This document shows positions 1 to 43,233 of a stretch of 64,000 nucleotides of DNA, piece after piece. Below the pieces are notes generated by a model. It was not told where the DNA came from. It was given only the letters and a program-made list of their open reading frames with translations, and made no database searches. Source of the stretch: Adineta vaga. Taxonomy: Eukaryota; Animalia; Rotifera. Both the position numbers and the translations under genes were made by a program. Location of the stretch: contig CP075495.1 of assembly GCA_021613535.1 (NCBI GenBank), positions 13,330,001-13,394,000 of the forward strand, written 5' to 3'. The number at the start of each line of letters is the position of its first letter. The first letter of the stretch is position 1.

Positions 1-3000
1 TTAGACAGATTTAATCAATAACATCAGTTAGATTGAATTTCATGTATTTGTATCGTCAGAAGAGAATTCTATCTACAACTATCTAATCTTATATCTTTGT
101 TCTCTAGTGAACCAATTCAATTTTCATCATTTGATCGTCAATATCATGACTACCTTGTTTTATCATCAGTCTATCCACTTTATCTCTGTTTAATTTATCG
201 TCAATGTTCTTGGATAATCAAAACTTTATTTATTCTAACTTGTTTATTAGTTCAATTAGTTCTTTTTGAATATATATGGTTAACAACAAATCTATATTTT
301 CCATCAATAAATCGTTTACATCATTATACAACATTTACATTGATTATATTTCATGGTATACTTTTAATTATTTCATCCTATGTTCGAGAATGGTTAGAAA
401 AAATCGATTTCGTCTGGCTTAAACAAGTTGATAATGAACGTTTAACGATTGTTCGACAACGTGATGAATTAGTTAAACAAACATCCGTATATTTTCCACA
501 ACGTGTTATTAATTATTATTTACGTATAGATTCTGAGACGGGTTTATCGCAACATTATCATCGAAAATATGATCGAATGGCTTTATTATATATGAATTTT
601 TCGTCAGTGAATATTGAACAACAATATATACTTATGGATTATTTGAATGATATTGAATATTTATTAAAAAATAATGAGAAATATATTCAAATTGTTATGC
701 ATAGAAAATCAACAATGAAAGAAATTATGTTTTCAATCGATACGAATACGGATGATTCAACAAAATCGATTCAACAATTAGTTGAACTTCTATTCCATTT
801 AGACGAACGTTTAAAACAGATTTCATCATCGACAATAAATCTTGCAGCTTGTTTACATATTGGTTGTGTACATGAAATTTTGATACATCTAGAAAATTAT
901 CCAAGAATTGATATTTGGAGTGAACAAATTGCACTTCTACAATTACTTATGACAAAAACACAAGTAAATCATTGTTTAACAACATCAGCTGTATATCATC
1001 AGTTAAATGAACTTTATCTATTTCGAACTGCTGGATCAGTTGTTAGTGGACAAATAAATAATACGCATATTTATTATTTACTTGGTCGTCTTATCGGAGA
1101 TAATGTCTTTCAGGTAAAAATACAATATTTAATCGTTGTTAAACATATTGTTAAGGTTGTATCTGATCCTAAAGGAAAAATAGTAATTTGTGACTTTATA
1201 GTCTAGACATTTAACACAAGAAAACAAGGTTTGAGGTGTATGTGTAGGGAATAGTATAATATTATAAAATTCCTGTGTAGGAAAAATAGTTCTACATCTT
1301 CCATTGTATCAATTGTTTTACTATGTAGAGCAAACAAACACATTTAGTAGATAATGAATTTTATTGTCCGAAATCGGTGATCAAGGTTTTCTTTTATATT
1401 CTTTGCCGTTTCATTATCGTTCGAAAAACTAAAAGTAAACAAACAAATCGACTCTAATATTTTCCGATCCAGTTCTATAATAATCCTATTTCTACTACCT
1501 ACTTTGAAGATCAAATATTTCTCGAATCATTTAGGGTCGTAATGCACTTCCATTAACAATTGGTCATACAAATATGGGTACTGTTCAAAAATCGTCCAGT
1601 ACAGATGATTCTCATCATTCACAATCATCACAATATCGTAGTAAATTGAATTCTCAAAAAGAAGATAATCATATACAAATGTCCACAACAACCACAAATA
1701 CAACTACAACATCATCATCTGGTATTCACAATGAACAACAAAGTCTCTTGAAACATCCATCATCACGAAAACATGTTCGAATATCGAATCATTTTCCAAC
1801 AATTGAAAATCCATCCTATCGTCAAACACTTTTACAAGCATTGAATGGTACAACTAACAATAATACTAATAATACTAATCAATCTCATCAAGAAATTAAT
1901 CCAATCAAAAAGATTTCGAATCGTTTAATTGCAAAAAAAGAATTATCACCATCAGTTTTAAAAGATTATGTACCACGAATGATTCATTTAAGTGATAATA
2001 GTTGTTGGTCATCAAGAGAAGCAATGACACCATCAGAAGCCAGTGGTAGTAAATGTTTAATATTAACACAACAAATGCTTAATGGATCAACAGGTATAAT
2101 CGATAATCTTTCTAATTTTCTAAATATTGCTTTCTTTATGTTTGCTATAGATGATAATAGCCGATGTAAATCTACACCACCACCGCCACAACCATTGTCA
2201 AGAGCTGTTGTATCAAATCGTAATTTATCAACAGAAAGAAAGAGTTTCACAGAAGAAGATTTTCGTCAATTACTTCACGAAAAATCGTCGAAAGAAATAA
2301 TCAATCCTTCTCGAAGTTTATCTACGACAAATGAAGAAACAGCTTCGTCTTTTTCTGGTTGGGATGATATACCACCATCACCAATACCAAGTATTAAATC
2401 GAATCATGTCATTATACAACAACAAGAATCAATTAAATCTTCACCAGCACAACCACCTATTATTGATTGTTATTATCCTCGTCGTCCATGTGATTTATCA
2501 TTTACAGTTAATATGACAACAACTGAAGATGATAGTAGTAGTCGTACGGATACAAAATCAACAGTTGTTCATTCACCAGCATCAACAGTTGCTACAATAA
2601 CTTCATCTATGCCACTTGCTCTTTCACCTCCCGTAAATATTGCTAAACCAGTTGTTGTTACTTCACAAACACCTTCACCATCGCAACCATTACAGAAACA
2701 ACCTGTTATGAGATATCGACCAATGCCATTTGATTTAGCACGTAAATTAGTTGCGGAAACATCTGAGAGTGCTCTTTCTGACATCTCTGTTGAACATCAA
2801 CATGATCCATGGACACAAAATATAGCTTATCAATCAAAACATCCACAAAGAACACGTCTTTCATCTAGTTATAATAATTTACAAGATCTTGTGCAAATAC
2901 ATGATGTATCAAAGTAAATATATTAACATCCTTTTCTTTTTTATAGTTCAAATACTTATCTATTCATTTATTCTATTTATAGATTTCTTCCAAAAGAAAC

Positions 3001-3676
3001 TCAATTATCATCAACAGCACAGAGCGATTTATTACAACGTTGGCTTGAAGATCAACTAACGTTATTTCGTCATCAAGTTAAACAAACACCACCGTCATCT
3101 GCGAGAAAAAATAAACGATTTTCAACGCATGTCATCATTCAAAATGATTCAACTGATGATGAATCAGAAACTATTAATGAAAATACTTTTAATGCTATAA
3201 CAAATGGATCAAATTTACCATTGAAACCTCGATCATCAACGAAACGTTCATATGATCATGTCAGATATAAATCGTTACGAAAAAATCCAACTCAAACTAC
3301 ATCTCATCTTATTCGACATGAATCACTCAAACATCGAAATCGACCATTATTATTCGAGCATACTTCTCAATTTAATAAAGTCACAGGAAATCATCATATA
3401 AATCATATGAAAAAACCTTCACGTCGAACGGATTCAGCTTCAATGCCTCGATCAGATTTAAGTGATATCTCATCATCTCGAGCAGATAATTTATCTGAAA
3501 GTGTTATATCAAATCTTGAATCGGAATATGATAATATTTATACTCAACCACAAAATTCAAATACAACGCCATCAATTATGACAAATTCACAGATTTTAAG
3601 TGATGATGATGACGATGATGATGAAACAACTTTAGCGACAACAATAGCAACATCGACAAATCGGTGTTACTTTTAG
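1..3676 (+). CDS. Degenerate adenylyl-cyclase-like membrane protein (TM helices, class III cyclase-homology domain, long Ser/Thr/Pro-rich tail); 5' part lies outside the window
   Basis: Exons ~7-1113, 1535-2093, 2151-2913 and 2983-3676 splice in frame via GT-AG introns. After the TM segments, 'YFPQRVINYYL...YHRKYDRMALLY...LAACLHIGCV...PRIDIWS...' follows the layout of the adenylyl cyclase C2 domain (ILPAHVA..HQSY..RVGINHGPV..PQYDIWG). Confidence 0.7.
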
Positions 3677-4136: not shown

Positions 4137-4464
4137 TTACTTGGAATAGCATTGTCAGAGTCAAGATCTATCTAATTTTAAGCAAAAGCATCACATTGCT
4201 TCCTATATATATATATATATACCAGAAATTCCGATTTCTTCCCTAGTCTTATGTTTCTTTGCTTAACATCAACGAGTGTCGACGTCTATATTTTCCAAGC
4301 ACAATTTTAGCTTTTTTCTTTCCAGACTTTGTTCTTTCTCCGACTTGATCATTGTTTCATCTAACTATCCAATCAAATCTTACTTATTGTAATTATTATT
4401 TAGATTTATTATAGAACATCTCGACTCTTCGATATTAACAAAAAGACCAAAATTCTAAGCAATA

Positions 4465-6561
4465 ATGGGCGCTTGCAAATCAAAACAATTCGGTTGTTGT
4501 ATTGCAATTGATAGTGATGAATCGATAATATTAGATAAACCAACAGGTAAAGAAACTCGTCATGGTCCTGGTTGGTTTTGTTTTCCAAATTGGTGGGAAG
4601 CTCAAGTTGTTAAATCTATCCCATTACAAAACAATCAATACCTTGTGATTAAACATGTTATTCTTCCCGAAAGCAATCGTAAATCACGATCAGAAGAAAT
4701 CGCTTTACAAAAACGTTCAACACTAAATGAGAATGATGAACTATTGAATGATCCAGATATGCAATTACTTGAAATTGTTCGTGGACCAAAAATTTATCAT
4801 ATAAATAATCCTTATGATCGTATTAGTGAAGTAAAATCTATGATAGATCTATCCGTTACACAATATATTATCGTCACGGATAAATTGACAGGAGCCAAAG
4901 CCATCGAATCAGGTCCGAAATTATTTTGTCCAAAACCGTATGATGTAGTTAGTGAGATTCACAATATGTACAATTTATCATCAACAGAATATATTATTGT
5001 AACTGATGAATCAAAAGGAGAAAAATTCACAGTTTTTGGTAAATCTTTATTAATAAATCTAATCATTTTTTTTTATTGGATATCAAACTATTTTCTAGGT
5101 CCAAAATTATTTTTACCTAGAGCTTATGATAAAGTATCGGCAATTTATAATTATATCGTTCTTAATCACGCACAATATTGTCGTATTATTGATACTCGTA
5201 CAGGTGTTATGCGTATTGAACGAGGTCCTCAAACATTTTCACTTGGACCATATGAAGCATTGAAAGAAGATAATCATCAAACTATCTTCAATATTATTAA
5301 TATCGATACAGAAAATGCAGTACTTGTTAAAAATCTTGATACGGGTATGGATGAATTAATAACAATTCCACAAAAATTTATTCCATCATTTACACAAACA
5401 TTTATTGAAATAAGAAAATTAATCAAACTAGCACCATGTAAGTGTTTCTTTCTAAAAACTAAAGAATGATTATTGATTTCGAATGAAATTAATCTAGATG
5501 AAAATATGATATTAATTGACAAGGATGGTCAACATATATTAAAAAATGGTTTGAAAGATAAATCATTTTTTCTCTATCCCTATCAACAAACTTATACTCA
5601 ACAATGGTCAAATGATCTAAAAAAAGATCATCAATCAACCTCAACTGTTAATCGTTTTGATACAAGAAATCAATGTAAACTAAAATTATTTTTCGAGATT
5701 TTTTTCTTTTTTTAAAATAATATTCTTTCTTTTTTCAATAAGATATGGATTATGAATTTCTTGTTCGTACGGCAGATAATGTTGAAATCATCCTTGATGT
5801 TTCTATCTTCTGGCAAATAACAGATTTATATAAACTTGTTCTTGTTACACAAGATCCTCCAGAAGATATTTGTAAGTCAAACTGATTACATAAAGTTCAC
5901 TTTTGTTTAAATTCATTGATGTATATTTCTAGGTAATCATACACGTTCGGAAATTTTAAGTCAAGTATCAAAATATAATATGAAAGAATTTATGGAATTA
6001 CCAAATAGTAAATTAATTGCTTCGGTTAATTCCGATAAAGATGATTCATTTTATGAATCTCGTGGTGTTAATGTTATACGCGTTGAAATCTTACAAAAAC
6101 GTTGTAAAGATCCGGAAATTCAAAAGATTTTCAAGCAAATTATTGACGAGAAAACTAATCGTATAAAAAATATTGAAAAACAAGAAGCAGAAAATGAAGT
6201 CAAATTACGTAATTTAAATGGTCAAATTGATGCTGAAAAATTAGTTGGAACATTATTGAAAATAAAGAAAGAAAATGAACGACAGGAAAATGTTGCTGAT
6301 GGTATTGCTGAGGGTAGTCGTATTCAAAATTTCATTGGTAATCTTGGCGAGGATATACCATTAGAAAAGAAATTACAAGTTTATTTTGATATACAAAATA
6401 CCAAACGTTTAGATTTGTTAGCACATTCAAATACAACTTTATATTTAACACCAAAAGAAGTTGATACGAAAGTTATCAATGTCAATACAATTCATCCAGT
6501 CAATGAATCAAACCAATCAACTCAATCACATATTCAAACCAGAATGAATATAGAAGTTTAA
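4465..6561 (+). CDS. Major-vault-protein-repeat / SPFH (band 7) domain protein with predicted N-terminal lipidation
   Basis: Exons 4465-5038, 5099-5437, 5498-5674, 5743-5871 and 5933-6561 are in frame. ~45-aa beta repeats (YIIVTDKLTGAKAIESGPKLFCPKPYD; YIIVTDESKGEKFTVFGPKLFLPRAYD; YCRIIDTRTGVMRIERGPQTFSLGPYE) precede an SPFH/shoulder-like 'VRTADNVEIILDVSIFWQI...DPPEDICNHTRSEILSQVS...RGVNVIRVEI' and a coiled coil. Starts MGACKS. Confidence 0.75.
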
Positions 6562-7115
6562 TGAAACAGAAAGAAAATTTACCTATTTCTCCTTTCTTAT
6601 GAAACAATTATCTTCTCATACCTTCTATTCGAATTCTTACTAGAAATAAACATAGTATTAATCAACAAAAATAAATCATGAAAAGAAGAATTCCCTAATC
6701 AGAATAACTTCCATGAAGAATACAATAGCAAAATATCGATACGAAACAGAGATATATAGATTCATACTCACATTCACCTATTAACGCAACATGGAACTTA
6801 TGTTGAAATCTATTTTTGTTTGCATTGAATTAGAAAGCAAAACTAGTTATTAGTAGTGCAATAATGAATATTGGAATGTTTACTGAATACTTCTCAATAC
6901 AAGAAAAACATCTAAAAATAAGAAATCTTCGATGAAATTTTTTTCTTTCTTCGTTCTCTTTTTATTTCAAATAAAATCATAAAAAATAAAACGAAAAAAA
7001 AAATAAAAACCTTGATCTTATACAAAAAAACGAAATCTTTTAGTTACACATATTTCTATCGAAAAACCCTACATTAACAAACGACTTCTATTCTACGAAT
7101 CTATCTAATTAAATC

Positions 7116-7431
7116 ATGACAAAAGAAGATTATAGAACGACGAAAGTTGATATCAGTAAGAAATAATTTGCATGTTCAGATATTTAACAGAATTTCTGCT
7201 TTCCTTTCCTGTAGAAGATGAATGTTATTGTTGTCAAGCACGTTTAACTGGTCAATCTATACAATTTGCTATACGCAGTTTTCCATTTCAAGATCCTCAA
7301 ATTTATAAACGACCATGTCTTATTTGTCATAATGTAATGTCTAGACAAATTCGACAAGTTAGACATAATAAGTCGAATTTGAATTGAAAAATAATAAATC
7401 AATCAATTAGCTTTTCTTTTTTCTATTTTGA
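7116..7431 (+). CDS. Small Cys-containing protein (~67-70 aa), unknown function
   Basis: ATG 7116; intron 7156-7214 (gtaag...gtag, 59 nt) keeps frame: MTKEDYRTTKVDIKDECYCCQARL...KRPCLICHNVMSRQIRQ. Ends at 7387 if unspliced or 7431 via a second intron. Confidence 0.55.
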
Positions 7432-7553
7432 AATAAATTTATATATATCCGTCCATCCATTTTCCTTTGATTCAAAATGATTGGAGGAACTTTCTAACAA
7501 ACCATAGAATTCTCCGAATGAAATCTATTGTCTGTCTTTTTATTTGAAATGAA

Positions 7554-9462
7554 ATGAACTGTTCTATTGAAACGAAAATATCATCGGGTGAAAAAATTGA
7601 TCATGATGAAGAAAATGCCAAATTAATTGTTTCAGAATTGATCGATTTACTTCAAGATGAACGAGCCTATCGAGATCTTGCTGTTGTTACTGAAATAACT
7701 AAAACTGTACAGTTACTTATCAGACAAAAGGATTGTAGAAGAAAAGAAGTCATCAATCATCCACAAGTAACTTTTTGATTTGACAATTACAAGAAAAACA
7801 AAAGGTAATTCATTCTTTCTAGTTGATCACATCGTTGGCTAAATTATTCAATACCGACAATGATCTTACATGTTTATTATCTAGTCTTTTTCATGATCTT
7901 TCTACTGAAGAAGACGGAATCCGATTATTATTGATCACGGGAATTATACCAATTCTTCTTCAAACACTTGAGTATATATATATATATATATGAAAAAGAT
8001 AATGACCTATTTATCAATTCATTTGAATATAGAGTGTTAAATGATGATGTCATCAATTTTATTCTTACGACGCTTCGTAATTGTCTTATTGGTTTAAATA
8101 CGGAATCGGGAGAAGAAATTCAAGCGCATAATGGTTGTATGATATTTATATCATTACTTATTCATCGTCATTCAGATAAACAAATGAATTTTCTTGCTGA
8201 TTGTTTATTACGTTTAGCAATGTTTAATAAAAACGCACAAGTAAATAGCAAAATAAAAAAAAACAAACTATATCGTTTATCTAAGAAATCTCTAAAAAAC
8301 AAAATCTTCTTTAGATCTATTTACAAACAAGTAAATTATTTCTTCAAGAATTAGTTTCGATTCTTGATGAAACAAATTATAATAAATTATCTTGTACATT
8401 AATACGAATGTTACCATTATTATCATCAAATATTCAAACTAAATCACTTCTTATACAATTTAATCTAATTTCAACTTTAGAAAAACTTTTACATTTAAAA
8501 ATTGATTCCAAAATTCAACGTTATTGTTTATTAACATTAAGAAATCTATCGAATGAAATTATTCATATGGTATTCAATTTCTTCTTTATTTCTACAATTT
8601 TCATTCGACTGTTTTTTAGGATATTTTTGATTCATTAATTCTTACATTAATACAATTACTTTCATCCGATGTTGATATACAAATCAAAGGTTATATTATT
8701 GATATTCTATCGAATTTATCATGTGAAAATCAAGCAAATAAATCTCTTATGATTCGAAATAATATCATTCATTTACTCGTACATATTCTTATTCAAATTG
8801 AGAATAGAGATGAAATGATTGAATCAATCGTGAGTGATATAAACATAAAGATCATTCTTAATTTACGAAGTCTTCTTTTTTTTTTTAGGTCTGTACTCTT
8901 CGACATCTCACAGGTCGATGTCCATTAGCACATCAAGCTCGTGAATCAATTCGAATGTACAATGTCATACCAATTCTTATAAAATATCTTCATTTAAAAG
9001 AATCTAATTGGTCATTACTAAAAGCTTGTATTGGTCTTATACGTAATTTAGCATTAGCATCGAATAATATGAAAATTTTATGTGAACATCGAACGATATG
9101 TAAAATAGGAAAATTATTTTTTCAAATGAAACATATTCCTGAACGTTATGAGATATTTGTTACAACTTTGTTTGTTTTTACTCAACAACAAGATGAGAAC
9201 TTTCAAGTGATCATCTATGATCAAATCATCAATTCAAATTGTATTGAAACACTTGTTCAAGTAGGAATCAATATATTAATCATGTCTATTTATATGTTCT
9301 ATTTTTCAGTTAGCAACAACGAATAATTGTGATCAAATTCAACAAATGTCAAAAACAATCATAGATGATATATGTCAATGTGGTGAACAGAATGACTATC
9401 GACAACGAATACGTGATATAGAAAAATCAATTAAAATAGCCCAATTTATACAATTTGATTGA
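7554..9462 (+). CDS. Divergent beta-catenin/plakoglobin-family armadillo-repeat protein
   Basis: Multi-exon gene. 'HDEENAKLIVSELIDLLQDE', 'CLLTLRNLS', 'ILSNLSCENQANK' and '[59 protein letters not shown]' match beta-catenin ARM repeats (CALRHLTSRH...[20 protein letters not shown]). Confidence 0.85.
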
Positions 9463-30062: not shown

Positions 30063-33000
30063 TTATCGACGATAGGATGATGATTGCATGAAACGAAGTG
30101 TTGGTCGTTCTTGTGTTTGTTGAACGAATGGTGCTAGAATTTAATTTAAAAAAAAGTTTAATTGCTTTTGAATGAACACAAAACTATTCATCATTTACTT
30201 CTTTGTTGATCATATTGTTGATCTGAAACCATAGGTTTTTGAGTTTGTACGCGACGATTGTATTCTCTCATCAATGGTAATGAAAAGAGTCGTTGCATTT
30301 TTGGAACTTCTTTACGTGCATTGATTTGATTGTATGCTTTACCATATGAACTGAAAGCAATAAGATATATCAGCTAGTTCTAATAGAATTTTCTTATTTC
30401 TTACTTTTGATCATTTGAAATCATATGTGGATTATAATTACGGTAACGATGACCTTGTTGTTTATCAATACTTTGATCAGTTAAACTGACTGTTGGTCGA
30501 TTGTATGCTAATTTAGATTCGTGTTTGTTATAATTAATTTGATATGATGATGGTTGATCTTCAGCTGGACGTGCTGGTGATGTTTCTTCTCGATCACAGA
30601 TTTTACTTTCTTGGTTCCAGAATAAACCACCTGCACATGGTCGAACATAGAAAATATCACCATTACATTGTACATAAGCATGAGCACTATATGCAAATGG
30701 ATAGTATTGTTCATGTTCTTGTTCCGAAGCCAAACATGGATTTGGTACAGTGTCTAAAGATTAAAAAAAGACAATCGATATGATGATAAAAAGAAATATT
30801 TTTTATTAAGACATACTTCGTCCACAAGTTAAACCATATGATTTTCGTCCATCGCAAGTACAAACGTAATCTTGTTTATAATCGCTTGCAACTAATGTAT
30901 GACATTCATTACCTTCGCCACATGGATTGGATGCGCATGACGATACAGGTGTTTCACAACGTTCACCTGTCCATGGACCACGGCAAGTACATCTAAATGT
31001 TGTTGGACTTGTCTGATAGCATTGACCACCATTTAAACATGGTTCTTCACGGTCACAAATTGATCTAGATTTGTCAACTTTTTCACATTGATCAATATCA
31101 GGATTATAAATAAGACTCGATGGACAATCCATGATTTCATATACATCTTCATTTAAACATGAAATATATTTTGTTGAATCTGATGGATGTGGTACATTAG
31201 TTTTAGCAGTTTGACCAGTACATGGTGATGCTAAAAGAAATTGAATACAATGAAATTAAATAAAAGTATTTAAAGGTTGTCTTACAATGACGAATTGGTG
31301 CGGATGGTAAGCGAGTTTGTTGTTTATTTAAATTCATTGATAATACACGCGATTGTTGTGGAAATGATCGTTCTTGGTTTTGTACCAAAAGAGGTGTATC
31401 TTGATCAACATTTAAATCATAATTACGTCTTTTACGATAATAATCTCCACTGGAATAATCAGAGTCGTAATTTGATGAATAACCACTTTTCTTGTTAGGT
31501 GAATAGTCATTATATCCATTGTATGAGTTACTTTGATAGTTTCCATTCCTAATCGAAAGAATACATTATATGAAGATTTTATTTGTGACTTCAATACGAA
31601 CTTTTTATAGTTTGATGTCGAATAACTATTATCACTAAAGAAGAAACAAGAAACATATAAGATAGTAAAGATTCATTAATATTATTAAGAAAAAAACGTA
31701 CGAATAAGAATTGCCATAACCACCTTTGTTGTTATAAGATTTTCCATAACCTTTGTTATAATCTCCACTACCATAGTTATCGTAATCTTTCTTGTAACCA
31801 CCTTTACCATAGTTGTCATAACCTTTGTTATAACCGCTTTTACCATAGTTGTCATAACCTTTGTTATCATAACCCTTGTTATAACCACCTTTACCATAGT
31901 TGTCATAACCTTTGTTATCATAACCCTTGTTATAACCACCTTTACCATAGTTGTCATAACCTTTGTTGTCATAGCCTTTGTTATAACCGCCTTTACCATA
32001 GCCACCTTTTCCTCCACTAATGTGAATAAAACAGAATTGTTTTTATGAAAAGGAAATGACTGAGATCGAATTACAATACTTACAAATCGTCATAGATGTC
32101 GAATCCACCTGGGAATGGGAATGGCTCAAAGAATGGACCTGGAAATCCACCGTAGAATTCATCACCAAATGGAAAACCACCGCCGAAACTACGAAGAAAA
32201 ATGAAAGTATTTAATTTTTAACATCTCATATCATAGTCTTCTATATGTTTCCTGATGAATGGAATAGCGTAAAGCATTCTATATGAAGTTTATTAGGCAA
32301 AAATCTTACCCGAAATCGGAATCAAATGGATCATCGAAGAATGGTTCAAAGCCAAACGGTCCACCAAGAGGTCCAAATGGTCCACCAAAAGGTTCTAAAG
32401 GTCCACCAAAAGGTGCACCAATAGGTCCAAATGGTCCACCGAAAGGTCCAAAGGGTCCACCAAGAGGTCCACCAAGAGGTCCACCGAAGGGTCCGCCAAA
32501 AGGTCCACCAAGAGGTCCGCCAAGAGGTCCGCCAAACGGTCCAAAAGGTCCGCCAAGGAATGGTGAGCCAAAAATAGGTGGTGGGCCAGGAACTATAGAA
32601 AAATAGGATTGAAAAATAAGACTAATTATAATAAAAAACACATACTGAAAGTTGCTGGAATGCTCATAGGAAGAGGTGGGAGTAATGGACCGCCAAGTGG
32701 TATTGGTAGTGGTGGAATCATTGGAGGAAGGAAGGGTGGAAGTGGTGGTGGAAGTATTGGAGGTCTGTAATTAGAACAATAATACGTAAGATTGAAAAGA
32801 TTTCATGGTATAATACATACGGAATAGGTGCAATAGGTGGAACTATTGGAGGAATAATTGGAGGTCTAAAAATGTATATAATGTATTAACTAGAAATAGT
32901 TTAAATAATAAATTTAAGAACATACGGAATTGGTCCAAAGGGTGGGATGATAGGTGGTCTAAAATGAACAAATATTGTTTCTGAACTGATAAATTACAAT

Positions 33001-36000
33001 ATTACATACCCAAAGAATGGTGGTGGAATTGGTGGTCTAAAATGAACAACTATATTGTTTCTGAAGCGATAAATTACAGTATTACATACCCAAAGAATGG
33101 TGGTGGAATTGGTGGTCTAAAATGAACAACTATATTGTTTCTGAAGCGATAAATTACAGTATTACATACCCAAAGAATGGTGGTGGAATTGGTGGTCTAA
33201 AATGAACAACTATATTGTTTCTGAAGCGATAAATTACAATATTACATACCCAAAGAATGGTGGTGGAATAAGAGGACCTGGGATTCCAATAGGACCTGGA
33301 AAGCCTGGTAATGGAATAAGACCAGGAACAGGTGGACCTGGAAGAAAAACACATATTTTACATATATATATATAAATGAAATTTAGTTTTGAGCAAAAAT
33401 CTGATTATTTACCGAGAGGTACTTCAAAATTAATTGGATCCGAAAATAATCCACCGGGGAAAAAGCGTTTCTTGCGTTCAACTGTTGAGCGTTTCTTTCG
33501 TCCATATGAATAGGATGATCCACTTCCGTAATTGTTGTTACTGGTACCGTACGACGATGATCCATAATTGTTGTTACCTGCTGGATATTCAGCGATCGTT
33601 GGCCAGTCACATACATTAATTCGTGAATTCCAGACAAGATAATTCGGGCATGGTTTAACATACATACGTTCAAGTGAACATTGAATGTAACAGCGTGGAT
33701 AGCCGGGTATTGGATAAAATTGTGCTCCGTTAATTGTGCATGGATTTTCAGTTGGTGCTAGAATAAAAATACATAACGCAATGACGAAATATGCTAAATT
33801 TAAAACAAGTCTTACTAGGTCCACATTGAGATAAATCAAGTTTTTCTGGGTAATAATTAGTATATTCGCCTGTCGATTGAATACCATATGGTGGGCCGTA
33901 AGTTGGTTCCGAATACGATGAACCATAGCTACCACTGTTACCGTATGACGAACCACCACCATAACTACCACCATTACCATAAGATGTTGGTGCAGCAGAT
34001 TTAGCTGCAGTACCATATGATGAGCCACCACCATAACTACCGCCATTACCATAAGATGTTGGTGCAGCAGATTTAACTGCAGTGCCATATGATGAGCCAC
34101 CACCATAACTACCGCCATTACCATAAGATGTTGGTGCAGCAGACTTAACTGCGGTACCATAAGATGATCCGACTGATTTGACGGTGTTACCATATGATGA
34201 ACCACCGAGTGTACGGTCACCGCCATATGATGTTGATGGAGCAACTTTAGCACTACCTCCATAGGATGAATCAACAATGTTGCGATCACTGCCATAAGAC
34301 GATGGTCCGACAGATTTGATAGCGCTGCCATATGCTGATCCAGTAGATTTGATATTGCTGCCAAATGATGAACCACCGAGTGTACGGTCACCGCCATATG
34401 ATGTTGATGGAGCAACTTTAGCACTACCTCCATAGGATGAATCAACAATGTTGCGATCACTGCCATAAGACGATGGTCCGACAGATTTGATAGCGCTGCC
34501 ATATGCTGATCCGGTAGATTTGATATTGCTGCCAAATGATGAATCACCGAGTGTACGATCGCTACCGTATGATGATGATGGAGCAGATCTGTCGACTGAA
34601 CCATATGATGATGAAGCAGATCTATCGACTGAACCATATGATGATGGAGCAGATCTATCGACTGAACCGTATGATGATGATGATGGAGCGGATCTGTCGA
34701 CTGAACCATATGATGATGGAGCAGATCTATCGACTGAACCATATGATGATGAAGCAGATCTGTCGACTGAACCATATGATGATGATGGAGCGGATCTGTC
34801 GACTGAACCATATGATGATGGAGCAGATCTGTCGGCTGAACCATATGATGATGATGATCGGGTTAAAACAGATGTGCTTGGATAATCATTTACAAATCGT
34901 GCTTGTGAACCATAGTCATTATATGATGTACTTCTGTCTTGAACGTTACCATCAATTAAACGATTTGATTCGATAATAGCTAAAGTGTAAAACATAGATG
35001 AAATATTTAACATAAATTAATATATTCTTACATGGACAAAATTCTGATTTTTCTGGAAGTTGATCGCAACTAATTGCTGTAAGATCAAAATCATTGCATC
35101 GATTTTTAACAGCTAAAAGAAAAGAAAATGAACTGAATAACCTGTTAGGTATGTAAACGAATATATTTACCTCGACAAAAACTAGCACACGGAAGAATTG
35201 CATCGCTGTCACATGGTGGAAAAAATAAAGGACATGTAAACATACGTATATCTTTGAAACAATCAGATTCTAATGCTGGTCGAAGTGTATTTAATAAATC
35301 ATTTGCTCCATCTTTTGAATTGTGACCAAAAAAATTTGGTAATGAAAATGTGGTTTGTGGTAATACCGAACAGTAACGAGAAAATGATGGAAAAACTGAA
35401 TCAATGATATTATAGCATGTATTTGTACTAGCACTACGGCTATCACCAGCAGCTGGTACAGGTGCAGATGAACCATATTGTTGTGCAGTACCACTGGTTA
35501 CACTAAATAGAAAGAAATTATTTTTCATGCTGTTGACTTTTCTTTAAACGTACTCAGAACCAGTATTTCTAGTATCAACCATAGATTGTTGATTGCTGAC
35601 TGGTTGTGCAGCTTGTTGTGCAACAGCAGGTTGTTCGGATCCAGCACCCAATTGTGAGCCTACAGCTCCTTGTCCACCGAATCCACCACCTAACTGTGAA
35701 CCCGCAGCTCCTTGTCCGCCGAATCCACCACCGAATTGTGATCCCATAGCTCCTTGTCCGAATCCACCACCGAATTGTGATCCCATAGCTCCTTGTCCGC
35801 CGAATCCACCACCGAACTGTGAACCCATAGCTCCTTGTCCGCCGAATCCACCACCGAACTGTGAGCCCATAGCTCCTTGTCCGAATCCACCACCGAATTG
35901 TGAACCCAAACCAGCTTGTCCAAATCCAGAAGCAAGTTGATTTGCAGATGGTTGTTGTTGAAAGGCTCCTGGGGATGAAAAACCGCCCCATGAGGACATC

Positions 36001-36260
36001 TGCGATTGTCCAAAACCAAATGGTTGTGCACCAAAATTTTGACCAGCTTGTCCAACTGAAAAATGTCAACAGATAATACATAAATATACATATTATTTAT
36101 AAAAAATATAATTAAACATTATACCTGTAGTGGCTTGTCCAGAGATACTAGTTGCCAATAGAAGGCACAATAACAGTTTCAAATGAACCTTAATCATAGA
36201 TATTATTAGAAATTTCATAATAATTTAAGTTTAAATTTCATGAAACCATACCTGTTTCAT
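30063..36260 (-). CDS. Large secreted repetitive polyprotein: signal peptide, Gly/Gln/Phe repeats, Frizzled CRD, SSYG repeats, chitin-binding (CBM14-like) domain, RKKR x2, Pro/Phe/Gly-rich block, Tyr/Lys/Gly/Asn repeats, RKRR, CBM14-EGF-EGF-CBM14
   Basis: More than 20 exons joined by GT-AG introns from MKQ|VHLKLLLCLLLATSISG to ...QSSSYRR*. Fz CRD (LPNFFGH..C...FTCPLFFPPC..PCASFC..VK.RC) at ~35030-35420; CBM14-like domains at ~33600-33750, ~31080-31225 and ~30590-30745. Confidence 0.8.
31715..32016 (-). repeat. Coding tandem repeat (54 bp) GKGGYNKGYDNKGYDNY
   Basis: Directly visible repeats such as ataacctttgttatcataacccttgttataaccacctttaccatagttgtc. Confidence 0.9.
32959..33269 (-). repeat. 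Tandem 78-80 bp intron+micro-exon units (27-nt exon PPIPPPFFG)
   Basis: Units begin at 32959, 33037, 33117 and 33197, are near identical, and each has a gtatgt donor and ttttag acceptor on the minus strand. Confidence 0.95.
33920..34860 (-). repeat. Coding repeats SSYGSVDRSAP (~8 copies), a 180-bp duplicated block, and KSAAPTSYGNGGSYGGGSSYG (x3)
   Basis: Visible in ORF 33748-35013 and in the DNA. Confidence 0.9.
35650..35910 (-). repeat. Coding repeat GSQFGGGFG(G)QGAM (~6 copies)
   Basis: Visible in ORF 35544-35999. Confidence 0.9.

Positions 36261-40364: not shown

Positions 40365-43233
<2,869 letters not shown>

What the first reader, a model, noticed from the sequence alone, without database searches (positions are those of the whole stretch)
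30063..36260. Furin-site 'biomaterial cassette' polyprotein combining several elastomer/adhesive-like repeats with chitin-binding, Frizzled and EGF domains
Seen: one spliced secreted reading frame with GSQFGGGFGGQGAM repeats, a Fz CRD, S(S)SYGSVDRSAP and PTSYGNGGSYGGG repeats, three CBM14-like domains, PPIPPPFFG and GGPFG blocks, GKGGYNKGYDNKGYDNY repeats and two EGFs. Established: abductin uses GGFGGMG-like repeats, pro-resilin uses PSxSYG repeats plus a chitin anchor with dityrosine cross-links, and mussel foot proteins are Tyr/Lys/Gly-rich. Inference: a single precursor delivering stoichiometric, chitin-anchored components of a composite material such as jaw/trophi, gut lining, egg shell or glue. 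I do not recognise this architecture as a described family.
Basis: partly seen in the sequence, partly recalled or inferred. Interest (0 to 1): 0.9.

Follow-up and report, generated by a model that had tools for sequence, protein, structure and literature searches.

The report
Bdelloid rotifer chitin-binding matrix polyprotein
This is a real, spliced and transcribed rotifer gene for a large secreted protein that joins chitin-binding, Frizzled-type and EGF domains to several rubber- or glue-like repeat blocks. Conserved cutting sites probably split it into three parts of a chitin-based structure such as the jaws or the eggshell, but nobody has studied it.

Summary
A minus-strand gene (36260..30063, 23 exons, about 1615 aa) encodes:
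- a signal peptide;
- Gly/Gln/Phe repeats;
- a 10-Cys Fz domain;
- Ser/Tyr/Gly repeats;
- CBM14 and an RKKR..RKKR doublet;
- Pro/Phe mini-exons;
- GGPFG repeats;
- Tyr/Lys/Gly repeats and an RKRR site;
- CBM14-EGF-EGF-like-CBM14 and a tail.

Pfam scores Fz, three CBM14 and one EGF above its cut-offs. RNA contigs from four studies join 21 of the 22 introns of the model exactly; the first lay outside the laid stretch.

The locus is annotated in Adineta vaga as hypothetical protein I4U23_009924. That model lacks the signal peptide and three mini-exons.

Relatives were found only in bdelloids (Adineta, Rotaria, Didymodactylos, metagenomes), and all are unnamed. In 13 relatives the two cleavage positions are conserved. 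The stretch between them has no Cys in 10 of 13, while the repeats have diverged.

Best reading: a convertase-processed, three-chain, chitin-anchored structural matrix precursor. The tissue (jaws, eggshell or other) is unresolved, and the resemblances to abductin, resilin and mussel proteins are in composition only.

The scan noted this stretch before (s1-505558), and probably its chromosome-5 duplicate (s1-502083).

New variant of a known kind; interest moderate to high.

The parts
36252..36260 (-). Start micro-exon ATGAAACAG (MKQ), followed by a 63-nt GT..AG intron (36251-36189)
   Evidence: Orthologues begin MKQ[VIG]HLKLLLCLLLA. The chromosome-5 duplicate has the same micro-exon. Sequence read. 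Not covered by the laid reads.
36125..36188 (-). Signal-peptide exon (VHLKLLLCLLLATSISGQATT)
   Evidence: Hydrophobic core followed by small residues (read from the sequence). An RNA joint links 36125 to 36055 in two runs.
35554..36055 (-). Gly/Gln/Phe-rich block with GSQFGGGFGGQGAM repeats (G 29%, Q 16%, no Cys)
   Evidence: TRF 42-nt unit x6.6; composition; no Pfam family; RNA joints on both sides.
35032..35502 (-). Frizzled-type cysteine-rich domain in two exons (35502-35171 and 35112-35032), with 10 Cys
   Evidence: Pfam Fz 45-52 bits against a cut-off of 32. Best PDB sequence matches are Frizzled-3/4/7/8 CRDs and sizzled, E about 4e-8. All 10 Cys are invariant in 8 orthologues, mean column identity 70%. 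RNA joints at 35502|35554, 35112|35171 and 34979|35032.
33816..34979 (-). Ser/Tyr/Gly-rich block (S 28%, G 16%, Y 10%; 38 Tyr, no Cys) with S(S)SYGSVDRSAP and PTSYGNGGSYGGG repeats
   Evidence: TRF units of 33, 171 and 72 nt; composition; no Pfam family.
33413..33757 (-). CBM14 domain 1 and a Tyr/Ser/Gly linker, then the doublet convertase site RKKR-STVE-RKKR (33465-33500)
   Evidence: Pfam CBM_14 32 bits against a cut-off of 22. Site coordinates. The site is conserved in all 13 relatives examined, and as a doublet in most of them.
32646..33337 (-). Seven Pro/Phe/Ile-rich exons (P 45%), including three identical 27-nt mini-exons that each lie in an 80-nt exon-plus-intron tandem unit
   Evidence: Model. 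80-nt unit x4 at 97% identity. RNA joints at 32865|32926 and 32958|33010, and loose ends at 33250, 32764 and 32821 that match the next exons. How many of the three mini-exons are used cannot be told from contigs.
32084..32592 (-). GGPFG/GGPLG block (G 33%, P 24%, F 22%) in two exons
   Evidence: TRF 12-33-nt units; RNA joints at 32592|32646, 32188|32310 and 32016|32084.
31286..32016 (-). Tyr/Lys/Gly/Asn/Asp block (Y 22%, K 15%; 35 Tyr, 23 Lys) with GKGGYNKGYDNKGYDNY repeats, ending in convertase site RKRR (31425-31436)
   Evidence: TRF 51-nt unit x3.7; composition; site coordinates. The site position is conserved, as YRKKRQY in most relatives. RNA joints at 31634|31702, 31547|31601 and 31230|31286.
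30817..31230 (-). CBM14 domain 2, one EGF and one EGF-like unit
   Evidence: Pfam CBM_14 36.5 bits and EGF 23.5 bits. The second unit has a six-Cys EGF pattern but Pfam does not call it. 66% identical to the chromosome-5 duplicate.
30405..30753 (-). CBM14 domain 3 and the start of the Gln/Arg/Ser-rich tail
   Evidence: Pfam CBM_14 32.5 bits. RNA joints at 30753|30817 and 30350|30405 in three to four runs.
30063..30350 (-). Last two exons: the tail, ending SSSYRR and a stop codon
   Evidence: Model. The loose end at 30199 matches the start of exon 22 in all four runs. The C-terminal SSYRR/SSYKK is conserved in orthologues.

Best explanation
This is one gene of the bdelloid rotifer Adineta vaga. 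It encodes a secreted precursor of about 1615 aa for a chitin-based extracellular structure. The signal peptide takes it into the secretory pathway. Furin-type proprotein convertases most likely cut it at RKKR-STVE-RKKR and at RKRR, giving three chains in equal amounts. (i) The N chain carries a Gly/Gln/Phe block, a Frizzled-type CRD, a Ser/Tyr/Gly block and one CBM14. (ii) The middle chain has no Cys and no recognised domain, and consists of a Pro/Phe block, a GGPFG block and a Tyr/Lys/Gly block. (iii) The C chain carries CBM14-EGF-EGF-like-CBM14 and a Gln/Arg-rich tail. The N and C chains would anchor to chitin fibrils, and the C chain, with two CBM14 domains, could bridge fibrils. The middle chain would act as a free filler or cross-linkable phase. 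The 112 tyrosines are candidates for oxidative cross-linking, more likely by a haem peroxidase (dityrosine) than by a tyrosinase. Shown here: the gene structure, its splicing and transcription, the domains, the conservation of the family, and the positional conservation of the sites. Inferred: cleavage, chitin binding, cross-linking and the structural role. The target structure is unresolved: roughly 40% jaws or pharyngeal cuticle, 35% eggshell, 25% other.
For: A single spliced frame is supported by RNA joints or loose ends at 21 of 22 introns in runs from four studies. All 8 indels between the RNA contigs and the window are multiples of 3. A JGI contig of 4587 nt carries an uninterrupted 4173-nt ORF for a full-length homologue with the same order of parts, so it is an intron-free single molecule. 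Fz, three CBM14 and one EGF score above Pfam's cut-offs. Cysteines occur only in the signal peptide and the recognised domains. R-x-[KR]-R occurs 3 times against 0.18 expected. In 13 relatives from Adineta, Rotaria, Didymodactylos and metagenomes, the sites lie at the same two places, although the flanking repeats differ. The stretch between the sites has no Cys in 10 of 13 and always has a Pro-rich first part. The C chain always has exactly 20 Cys. The genome has at least 9 convertase P-domain matches, 3 chitin synthase matches and several animal haem peroxidase loci.
Against: There is no protein-level evidence of cleavage, chitin binding or cross-linking. There is no tissue or stage information. 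The GGPFG and Tyr/Lys blocks are replaced by Pro/Gln/Met-rich and acidic Asp/Asn/Lys-rich stretches in Rotaria orthologues. What is conserved is therefore the layout and the general low-complexity character, not the particular 'elastomer' motifs. The role of the strongly conserved Fz domain in a structural protein is unexplained. No monogonont relative was seen, which is odd for a core jaw protein if jaws are homologous across rotifers, although the searches were of limited sensitivity.
Confidence: 0.68

Rival explanations
1. It is the same secreted protein, but it is not cut. The conserved basic clusters would then serve another purpose, such as binding polyanions or supplying lysines for cross-links, and the protein would act as one long chitin-anchored chain.
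For: No cleavage data exist. In Rotaria Fz-type orthologues the second member of the doublet has decayed, for example RKKRSTIERKKL.
Against: The motif kept is specifically R-x-[KR]-R, not merely a basic patch. At least one such site is kept at each of the two positions in all 13 relatives. The sites bound a Cys-poor, domain-free segment. Convertase genes are present.
Confidence: 0.14
2. It is a chitin-anchored signalling or lipid-binding protein. The Fz CRD would be the working part, holding a Wnt or a lipid at a chitinous surface like an immobilised sFRP, and the repeats would only be spacers.
For: The Fz domain is the best conserved part outside the C-terminal cassette: 70% mean column identity across genera and all 10 Cys invariant. 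It is closest to true Frizzled and sizzled CRDs.
Against: An old duplicate lineage (A. vaga chromosome 5 and four Rotaria species) keeps everything else but has lost Fz. Fz is therefore dispensable for the function of the shared scaffold. Most of the protein is repeat blocks that expand and contract in frame, which is typical of structural proteins.
Confidence: 0.08
3. It is a defence or gut-lining lectin. The CBM14 domains would bind foreign chitin (fungal pathogens, food) rather than the animal's own, as in peritrophin-like or immune chitin-binding proteins.
For: CBM14 proteins include peritrophic-matrix and immune proteins (established knowledge). Bdelloids are attacked by fungi (title of bioRxiv 10.1101/2021.09.04.458992, seen).
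Against: The large Gly/Pro/Tyr-rich repeat blocks, the polyprotein layout and the fixed 20-Cys bridging cassette fit a building material better than a lectin. No inducibility data were available.
Confidence: 0.07
4. The long frame is an artefact that merges two or more neighbouring genes.
For: No single A. vaga contig spans the whole gene, because contigs break in the repeats.
Against: Every adjacent pair of exons from the signal-peptide exon to the last exon is joined in RNA contigs. Independent gene models in six other bdelloid species give one protein with the same order of parts. One intron-free contig carries a complete homologue.
Confidence: 0.02

Closest known systems
Peritrophins and cuticular proteins analogous to peritrophins (CPAP1, CPAP3/obstructor) of arthropods
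   Same: They are secreted proteins that bind chitin through one or three CBM14 (ChtBD2) domains and organise chitinous matrices. CPAPs are classed by having one or three such domains and are expressed in cuticle-forming tissue (abstract of PMC3504105). This protein has three CBM14 domains, scoring above Pfam's cut-off.
   Different: Those families are not described with an Fz CRD, an EGF pair between CBM14 domains, five distinct low-complexity blocks, or conserved internal convertase sites. Domains 2 and 3 here have only four Cys. No orthology was shown; relatives were found only in bdelloids.
Pro-resilin of insects
   Same: Tyr- and Gly-rich repeats with SYG-type motifs flank a chitin-binding domain, and cross-linking is by dityrosine (established knowledge). 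Here 48 of 112 Tyr are followed by Gly, and the Ser/Tyr/Gly block adjoins CBM14.
   Different: Resilin's chitin anchor is the Rebers-Riddiford domain (PF00379), which no Pfam scan found here. The repeats show no sequence homology. Dityrosine is untested.
[quoted passage not shown]
   Same: This is a chitinous feeding structure built with many secreted, intrinsically disordered, low-complexity proteins (title and abstract of PMC9629831 / bioRxiv 10.1101/2022.03.11.483951). It is a functional analogy for rotifer jaws.
   Different: Those are many separate small genes, not one multi-module precursor. There is no shared sequence family, and the localisation here is unknown.
Tyrosine-rich eggshell precursors of trematodes (P14, P19, P48)
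   Same: Their Tyr residues are often followed by Gly, with Lys as the cross-link partner, and they make a hardened eggshell (PMC2758302). The Tyr/Lys/Gly block here has 22% Tyr and 15% Lys.
   Different: Those shells are tanned by tyrosinase through DOPA-quinone. No tyrosinase match was found in this genome (a weak negative). The trematode proteins have no chitin-binding domains. The Tyr/Lys block is not conserved in Rotaria.
Convertase-processed structural precursors (nematode cuticle collagens cut by BLI-4, profilaggrin)
   Same: A secreted or stored structural precursor is cut at R-x-[KR]-R to release its building units (established knowledge).
   Different: Here the units are three unlike chains with different domains, not repeats of one unit or the removal of a propeptide.
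Secreted Frizzled-related proteins and Frizzled receptors
   Same: A 10-Cys Fz CRD with clear sequence similarity.
   Different: There is no seven-helix membrane part and no netrin-like domain: the Pfam scans list only Fz, CBM_14 and EGF. The Fz CRD is embedded in a chitin-binding repeat protein.

Membership tests
CBM14 (peritrophin-A / ChtBD2) chitin-binding proteins | One or more CBM14 domains scoring above Pfam's gathering cut-off | tested here: met
   Three domains at 32.1, 36.5 and 32.5 bits against a cut-off of 22.1, and 69 bits summed on the public protein. The CPxxLxWN....CD motif is readable in all three.
CBM14 (peritrophin-A / ChtBD2) chitin-binding proteins | Actual binding to chitin | not testable with these tools
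   Needs a pull-down with recombinant domains.
CPAP1/CPAP3 or peritrophic-matrix peritrophins (arthropod families) | Orthology to the arthropod families, and expression in cuticle-forming or midgut tissue | tested here: not met
   In the three word-based searches every hit was a bdelloid or an unnamed metagenome protein. In the exhaustive search every hit that covered the whole query and was looked up was one too; the other hits were long multi-EGF proteins that were not looked up. Expression site not testable.
Frizzled / sFRP superfamily | Fz cysteine-rich domain with 10 conserved Cys | tested here: met
   Pfam Fz 52 bits against a cut-off of 32. All 10 Cys are invariant in 8 orthologues. Best PDB matches are Frizzled-3/4/7/8 and sizzled.
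Frizzled / sFRP superfamily | Seven-helix Frizzled membrane domain (receptors) or a C-terminal netrin-like domain (sFRPs) | tested here: not met
   The Pfam scans of all exons and of the whole public protein list only Fz, CBM_14 and EGF.
Pro-resilin | Rebers-Riddiford chitin-binding domain (PF00379) between elastic repeat regions | tested here: not met
   No such Pfam hit at E up to 0.1. The chitin anchor is CBM14.
Pro-resilin | Dityrosine cross-links | not testable with these tools
   Only the prerequisites were seen: 112 Tyr and haem peroxidase genes.
Abductin | Small molluscan Gly/Met/Phe-rich protein with FGGMGGG-type repeats (from memory; no profile exists) | tested here: inconclusive
   The block here is Gly/Gln/Ala/Ser/Phe-rich with few Met. 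The chromosome-5 duplicate has GGLGGMGGMGG runs. Composition alone cannot show homology.
Mussel foot proteins (DOPA adhesives) | Tyr converted to DOPA by a tyrosinase | tested here: inconclusive
   A Tyr/Lys/Gly-rich block is present, but no PF00264 match was found in the genome. That search rang in no control genome, so it is a weak negative. The DOPA chemistry itself is not testable here.
Convertase-processed polyprotein precursors | Signal peptide plus R-x-[KR]-R sites at the borders of the units, conserved among relatives | tested here: met
   3 sites against 0.18 expected. The same two positions are used in 13 relatives. Convertase P-domain genes are present.
Convertase-processed polyprotein precursors | Demonstrated cleavage into the units | not testable with these tools
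   Needs proteomics or blots.
EGF-like domains | Six-Cys EGF fold recognised by profile | tested here: met
   The first unit scores 23.5 bits against a cut-off of 21.5. The second unit has the six-Cys pattern but no Pfam hit, so it is called EGF-like only.

The most novel reading that the evidence does not exclude
This gene, with its Fz-less duplicate and the cassette-only paralogues, encodes the main organic matrix of the bdelloid jaws (trophi). It would then be the first molecular component known for the jaws that define Gnathifera. One transcript would deliver, in fixed proportion, two chitin-anchored chains and one free cross-linkable chain. The Fz CRD would act as a lipid- or ligand-binding module within a hard tissue.
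Probability: 0.3. Interest if true: 0.8.

Novelty: new variant of a known kind. Interest (0 to 1): 0.6.

Why it matters
In the paper searches made here I found no study naming a protein of rotifer jaws or eggshells. This family is a concrete and probably abundantly transcribed candidate (contig depth is a poor measure). It is conserved across bdelloid genera and can be tested directly by in situ hybridisation and by proteomics of isolated hard parts.

It also shows an unusual way of building a composite material. Unlike chains, two with chitin anchors and one without, are encoded in one precursor with conserved cutting sites, so their proportions are fixed.

The repeat blocks differ between genera on a fixed scaffold. 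That makes the family a natural experiment on which properties of low-complexity sequence matter. The pairing of a Frizzled-type domain with chitin-binding domains has not been described, and its purpose is open.

Tried and rejected
- **Greedy splice model:** the longest-ORF choice went wrong in the Pro-rich region. It was replaced by a hand-curated model, which the RNA joints later confirmed.
- **Fz paralogue on chromosome 1:** the only other Fz match to this domain (39% identity) is a different, shorter gene without CBM14. It is not a duplicate of the whole gene.
- **Repeat exons in Pfam:** no family, apart from a meaningless sub-threshold PAZ hit.
- **ESM Atlas, middle chain:** no usable hit.
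- **AlphaFold of the Fz domain:** an 8-sequence alignment gave a mean pLDDT of only 62. The model was not used and no fold search was run.
- **Second EGF alone in Pfam:** nothing.
- **Non-bdelloid relatives:** three word-based searches returned only bdelloid or unnamed metagenome proteins. In the exhaustive search the whole-query hits I looked up were also bdelloid or unnamed. Its top 150 were crowded by multi-EGF proteins whose sources I did not look up, so absence from monogononts is not shown.
- **Paper searches:** rotifer jaw or eggshell proteins, and A. vaga chitin-binding proteins, gave nothing relevant.
- **Expression table of PMC12220480:** the stored copy is cut after the first few hundred genes, so this gene could not be looked up.
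- **Tyrosinase profile:** no match, but the search rang in no control genome, so it is a weak negative.
- **Not attempted:** Complex prediction, because there was no specific binding claim to test.
Full report
**What is there**

The stretch 30063-36260 holds one gene on the minus strand. I joined them with GT..AG introns of 51-121 nt into one open frame.

My first model began at an ATG at 36218. There, ATGAAACAG (MKQ) is followed by a 63-nt GT..AG intron and then VHLKLLLCLLLATSISGQ. Orthologues begin MKQ[VIG]HLKLLLCLLLA, and the duplicate on chromosome 5 has the same micro-exon.

The refined model has 23 exons and encodes about 1615 aa.

One feature stands out. Three identical 27-nt mini-exons (GPPIPPPFF) each lie in an 80-nt tandem unit made of the exon plus its 53-nt intron, with copies 97% alike.

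**How the searches were run**

For whole-protein steps I used the public protein of the same locus (P0195). The exons were joined only inside scripts, for coordinates, composition, a local BLAST and a tree.

Read laying was given 6000 letters (30161-36160).

**Domains**

Exon by exon, Pfam gives the following, all above the curated cut-offs:

| Domain | Score (bits) |
|---|---|
| Fz | 45 |
| CBM_14, domain 1 | 32 |
| CBM_14, domain 2 | 36 |
| CBM_14, domain 3 | 32 |
| EGF | 23.5 |

- On the whole public protein, Fz reaches 52 bits.
- The Fz domain has 10 Cys and is most like true Frizzled CRDs and sizzled among solved structures.
- The second EGF has the six-Cys pattern, but Pfam does not call it.
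- The repeat exons match no Pfam family.
- Cysteines occur only in the signal peptide and the recognised domains.

Composition by block:

| Block | Main residues |
|---|---|
| Gly/Gln/Phe block | G 29%, Q 16% |
| Ser/Tyr/Gly block | S 28%, G 16%, Y 10% |
| Pro/Phe block | P 45% |
| GGPFG block | G 33%, P 24%, F 22% |
| Tyr/Lys/Gly block | G 23%, Y 22%, K 15% |

**Transcription and splicing**

I laid contigs of four runs from four studies on the gene; one run is an RNA library on record.

- Exact intron-skipping joints with CT..AC ends appear at 15 predicted introns.
- Loose ends whose letters match the next exon cover 6 more, including the Pro-rich mini-exons and the last intron.
- Every adjacent pair of exons, from the signal-peptide exon to the last, is therefore joined in RNA.
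- Only the first 63-nt intron lay outside the laid stretch.
- All eight indels between these contigs and the window are multiples of three, as expected for coding repeats.
- No single A. vaga contig spans the gene, because assemblies break in the repeats.
- A JGI contig of 4587 nt carries an uninterrupted 4173-nt ORF for a full-length homologue with the same order of parts. It is intron-free, hence cDNA-like and a single molecule.

**Whose gene it is, and its relatives**

The genome has six contigs totalling 100.8 Mb. NCBI names the protein of this locus 'hypothetical protein I4U23_009924 [Adineta vaga]'. That model of 1474 aa starts at an internal Met, so it lacks the signal peptide and the first 114 aa of the refined model, and it skips the three mini-exons.

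An exhaustive profile search with the CBM14-EGF-EGF exon, followed by word-based searches, found two classes of relatives:

- **Full-architecture relatives with Fz:** Adineta steineri, four Rotaria species, Didymodactylos carnosus and metagenomes.
- **Relatives without Fz:** four Rotaria species, one unlabelled Logan contig, and the A. vaga copy on chromosome 5.

All are unnamed or 'uncharacterized'. No non-bdelloid relative appeared. However, the exhaustive list was crowded by multi-EGF proteins and the other searches depend on shared words, so absence elsewhere is not shown.

The chromosome-5 copy keeps the whole layout except Fz, and has a ClpX-like gene upstream, as the focal gene does. 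In a tree of the cassette, the Fz-bearing Didymodactylos and metagenome sequences branch below a group that holds both types. The Fz-less sequences can be a single group, with support 78/86. This fits an ancestral Fz lost once in a duplicate lineage. Shorter paralogues carry only the cassette.

**The cutting sites**

R-x-[KR]-R occurs three times in the protein against 0.18 expected from its composition (2 of 2000 shuffles reach 3). In five relatives tested the same way, 0-2 of 2000 shuffles reach the observed count.

In 13 relatives the sites fall at the same two places:

- **Site A** lies 35-100 aa after CBM14-1, mostly as a doublet of the form RKKRSxxERKKR.
- **Site B** lies 45-70 aa before the cassette, mostly as YRKKRQY.

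Between them lies a segment of 287-455 aa. It has no Cys in 10 of 13 relatives, with a Pro-rich first part and a polar, charged last part. The chain after site B always has exactly 20 Cys.

The repeats themselves have diverged. Rotaria has Pro/Gln/Met-rich and acidic stretches where Adineta has GGPFG and Tyr/Lys/Gly repeats. The layout and the sites are under constraint; the particular motifs are not.

The genome encodes convertases, chitin synthases and animal haem peroxidases. A tyrosinase profile found nothing (a weak negative).

**Interpretation**

The best reading is a secreted precursor that furin-type convertases cut into three chains in fixed proportion. Two chains are anchored to chitin and one is free. 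Together they would build a chitin-based extracellular material. The many Tyr-Gly motifs are candidates for peroxidase-driven cross-linking.

- Shown: the gene, its splicing and transcription, the domains, the family, and the conservation of the sites.
- Inferred: cleavage, chitin binding, cross-linking and the structural role.

The tissue cannot be told with these tools. From established knowledge, chitin in rotifers is reported in the jaws and in eggshells, so these are the two leading candidates.

The chitin anchor is not resilin's domain, and the blocks concerned are not conserved across genera.

The closest known kinds are:

- CBM14 matrix proteins such as CPAPs (PMC3504105);
- the low-complexity proteins of the chitinous pharyngeal cuticle of C. 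elegans (PMC9629831);
- the Tyr-rich eggshell precursors of trematodes (PMC2758302);
- convertase-processed structural precursors.

I know of none that combines an Fz CRD, a CBM14-EGF-EGF-CBM14 cassette, several unlike repeat blocks and conserved internal cutting sites, and the searches here turned up none.

**Verdict**

- The locus is annotated, imperfectly, but unstudied.
- It is a new variant of a known kind (a secreted chitin-binding structural protein) with an undescribed architecture restricted, so far, to bdelloids.
- Earlier notes of this scan describe the same stretch (s1-505558), what is most likely its chromosome-5 duplicate (s1-502083), and the cassette paralogue at chromosome 2, 8.4 Mb (s1-489626).

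Noticed in passing
window 36125-36260 and 32953-33269: The NCBI model of this locus (I4U23_009924, 1474 aa) starts at an internal Met, so it has no signal peptide. It also omits the three 27-nt mini-exons. RNA joints and loose ends support the longer model.
   Followed up: yes
window 32953-33269: A tandem array of an 80-nt unit, each unit being a 27-nt exon plus its 53-nt intron, in 4 copies 97% alike. This is a recent duplication of whole exon-intron units. A. steineri lacks this exact array. Contigs cannot show how many copies are spliced in.
   Followed up: partly
L022 (G000:C5:6551501-6561500), about 4340-8880, plus strand: A duplicate of the gene on chromosome 5. It has the same layout and the same convertase sites, but no Fz domain and far fewer Ser/Tyr/Gly repeats. 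Its N-terminal block is rich in Gly and Met (GGLGGMGGMGG). Its first intron seems to use a GC..AG donor.
   Followed up: partly
window 40496-42296 (minus) and L022 1227-3488 (plus): A ClpX-like gene lies upstream of both the focal gene and its chromosome-5 duplicate. The conserved neighbourhood is consistent with the genome duplication of bdelloids.
   Followed up: no
L003 (G000:C1:4781001-4791000), about 1700-3420, plus strand: A separate small secreted gene with a related Fz domain (39% identity). The intron within the domain appears to be at the same position. An Ala/Pro-rich stretch follows, and there is no CBM14.
   Followed up: partly
L023 (G000:C2:8400001-8410000, minus) and L024 (G000:C5:10015001-10025000, plus): A second pair of paralogues carries the CBM14-EGF-EGF-CBM14 cassette without the upstream blocks.
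   Followed up: no
whole genome G000: No match to the tyrosinase profile PF00264, while animal haem peroxidases give 20 exon-level matches at several loci. The tyrosinase search rang in no control genome, so the negative is weak.
   Followed up: partly
window 31180 (run X7) and 32153 (run X9): Two contigs leave the window sequence here and continue for 255 and 106 unlike letters. They may come from a related strain or species, from a paralogue, or from an alternative isoform.
   Followed up: no
C-terminus of the protein (window 30063-30133) and the tail in exon 20: The C-terminal SSYRR/SSYKK and a G-x-RYRNYN motif in the tail are conserved across Adineta, Rotaria and a metagenome homologue. 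This suggests a functional end, such as trimming of the two basic residues or a binding motif.
   Followed up: no
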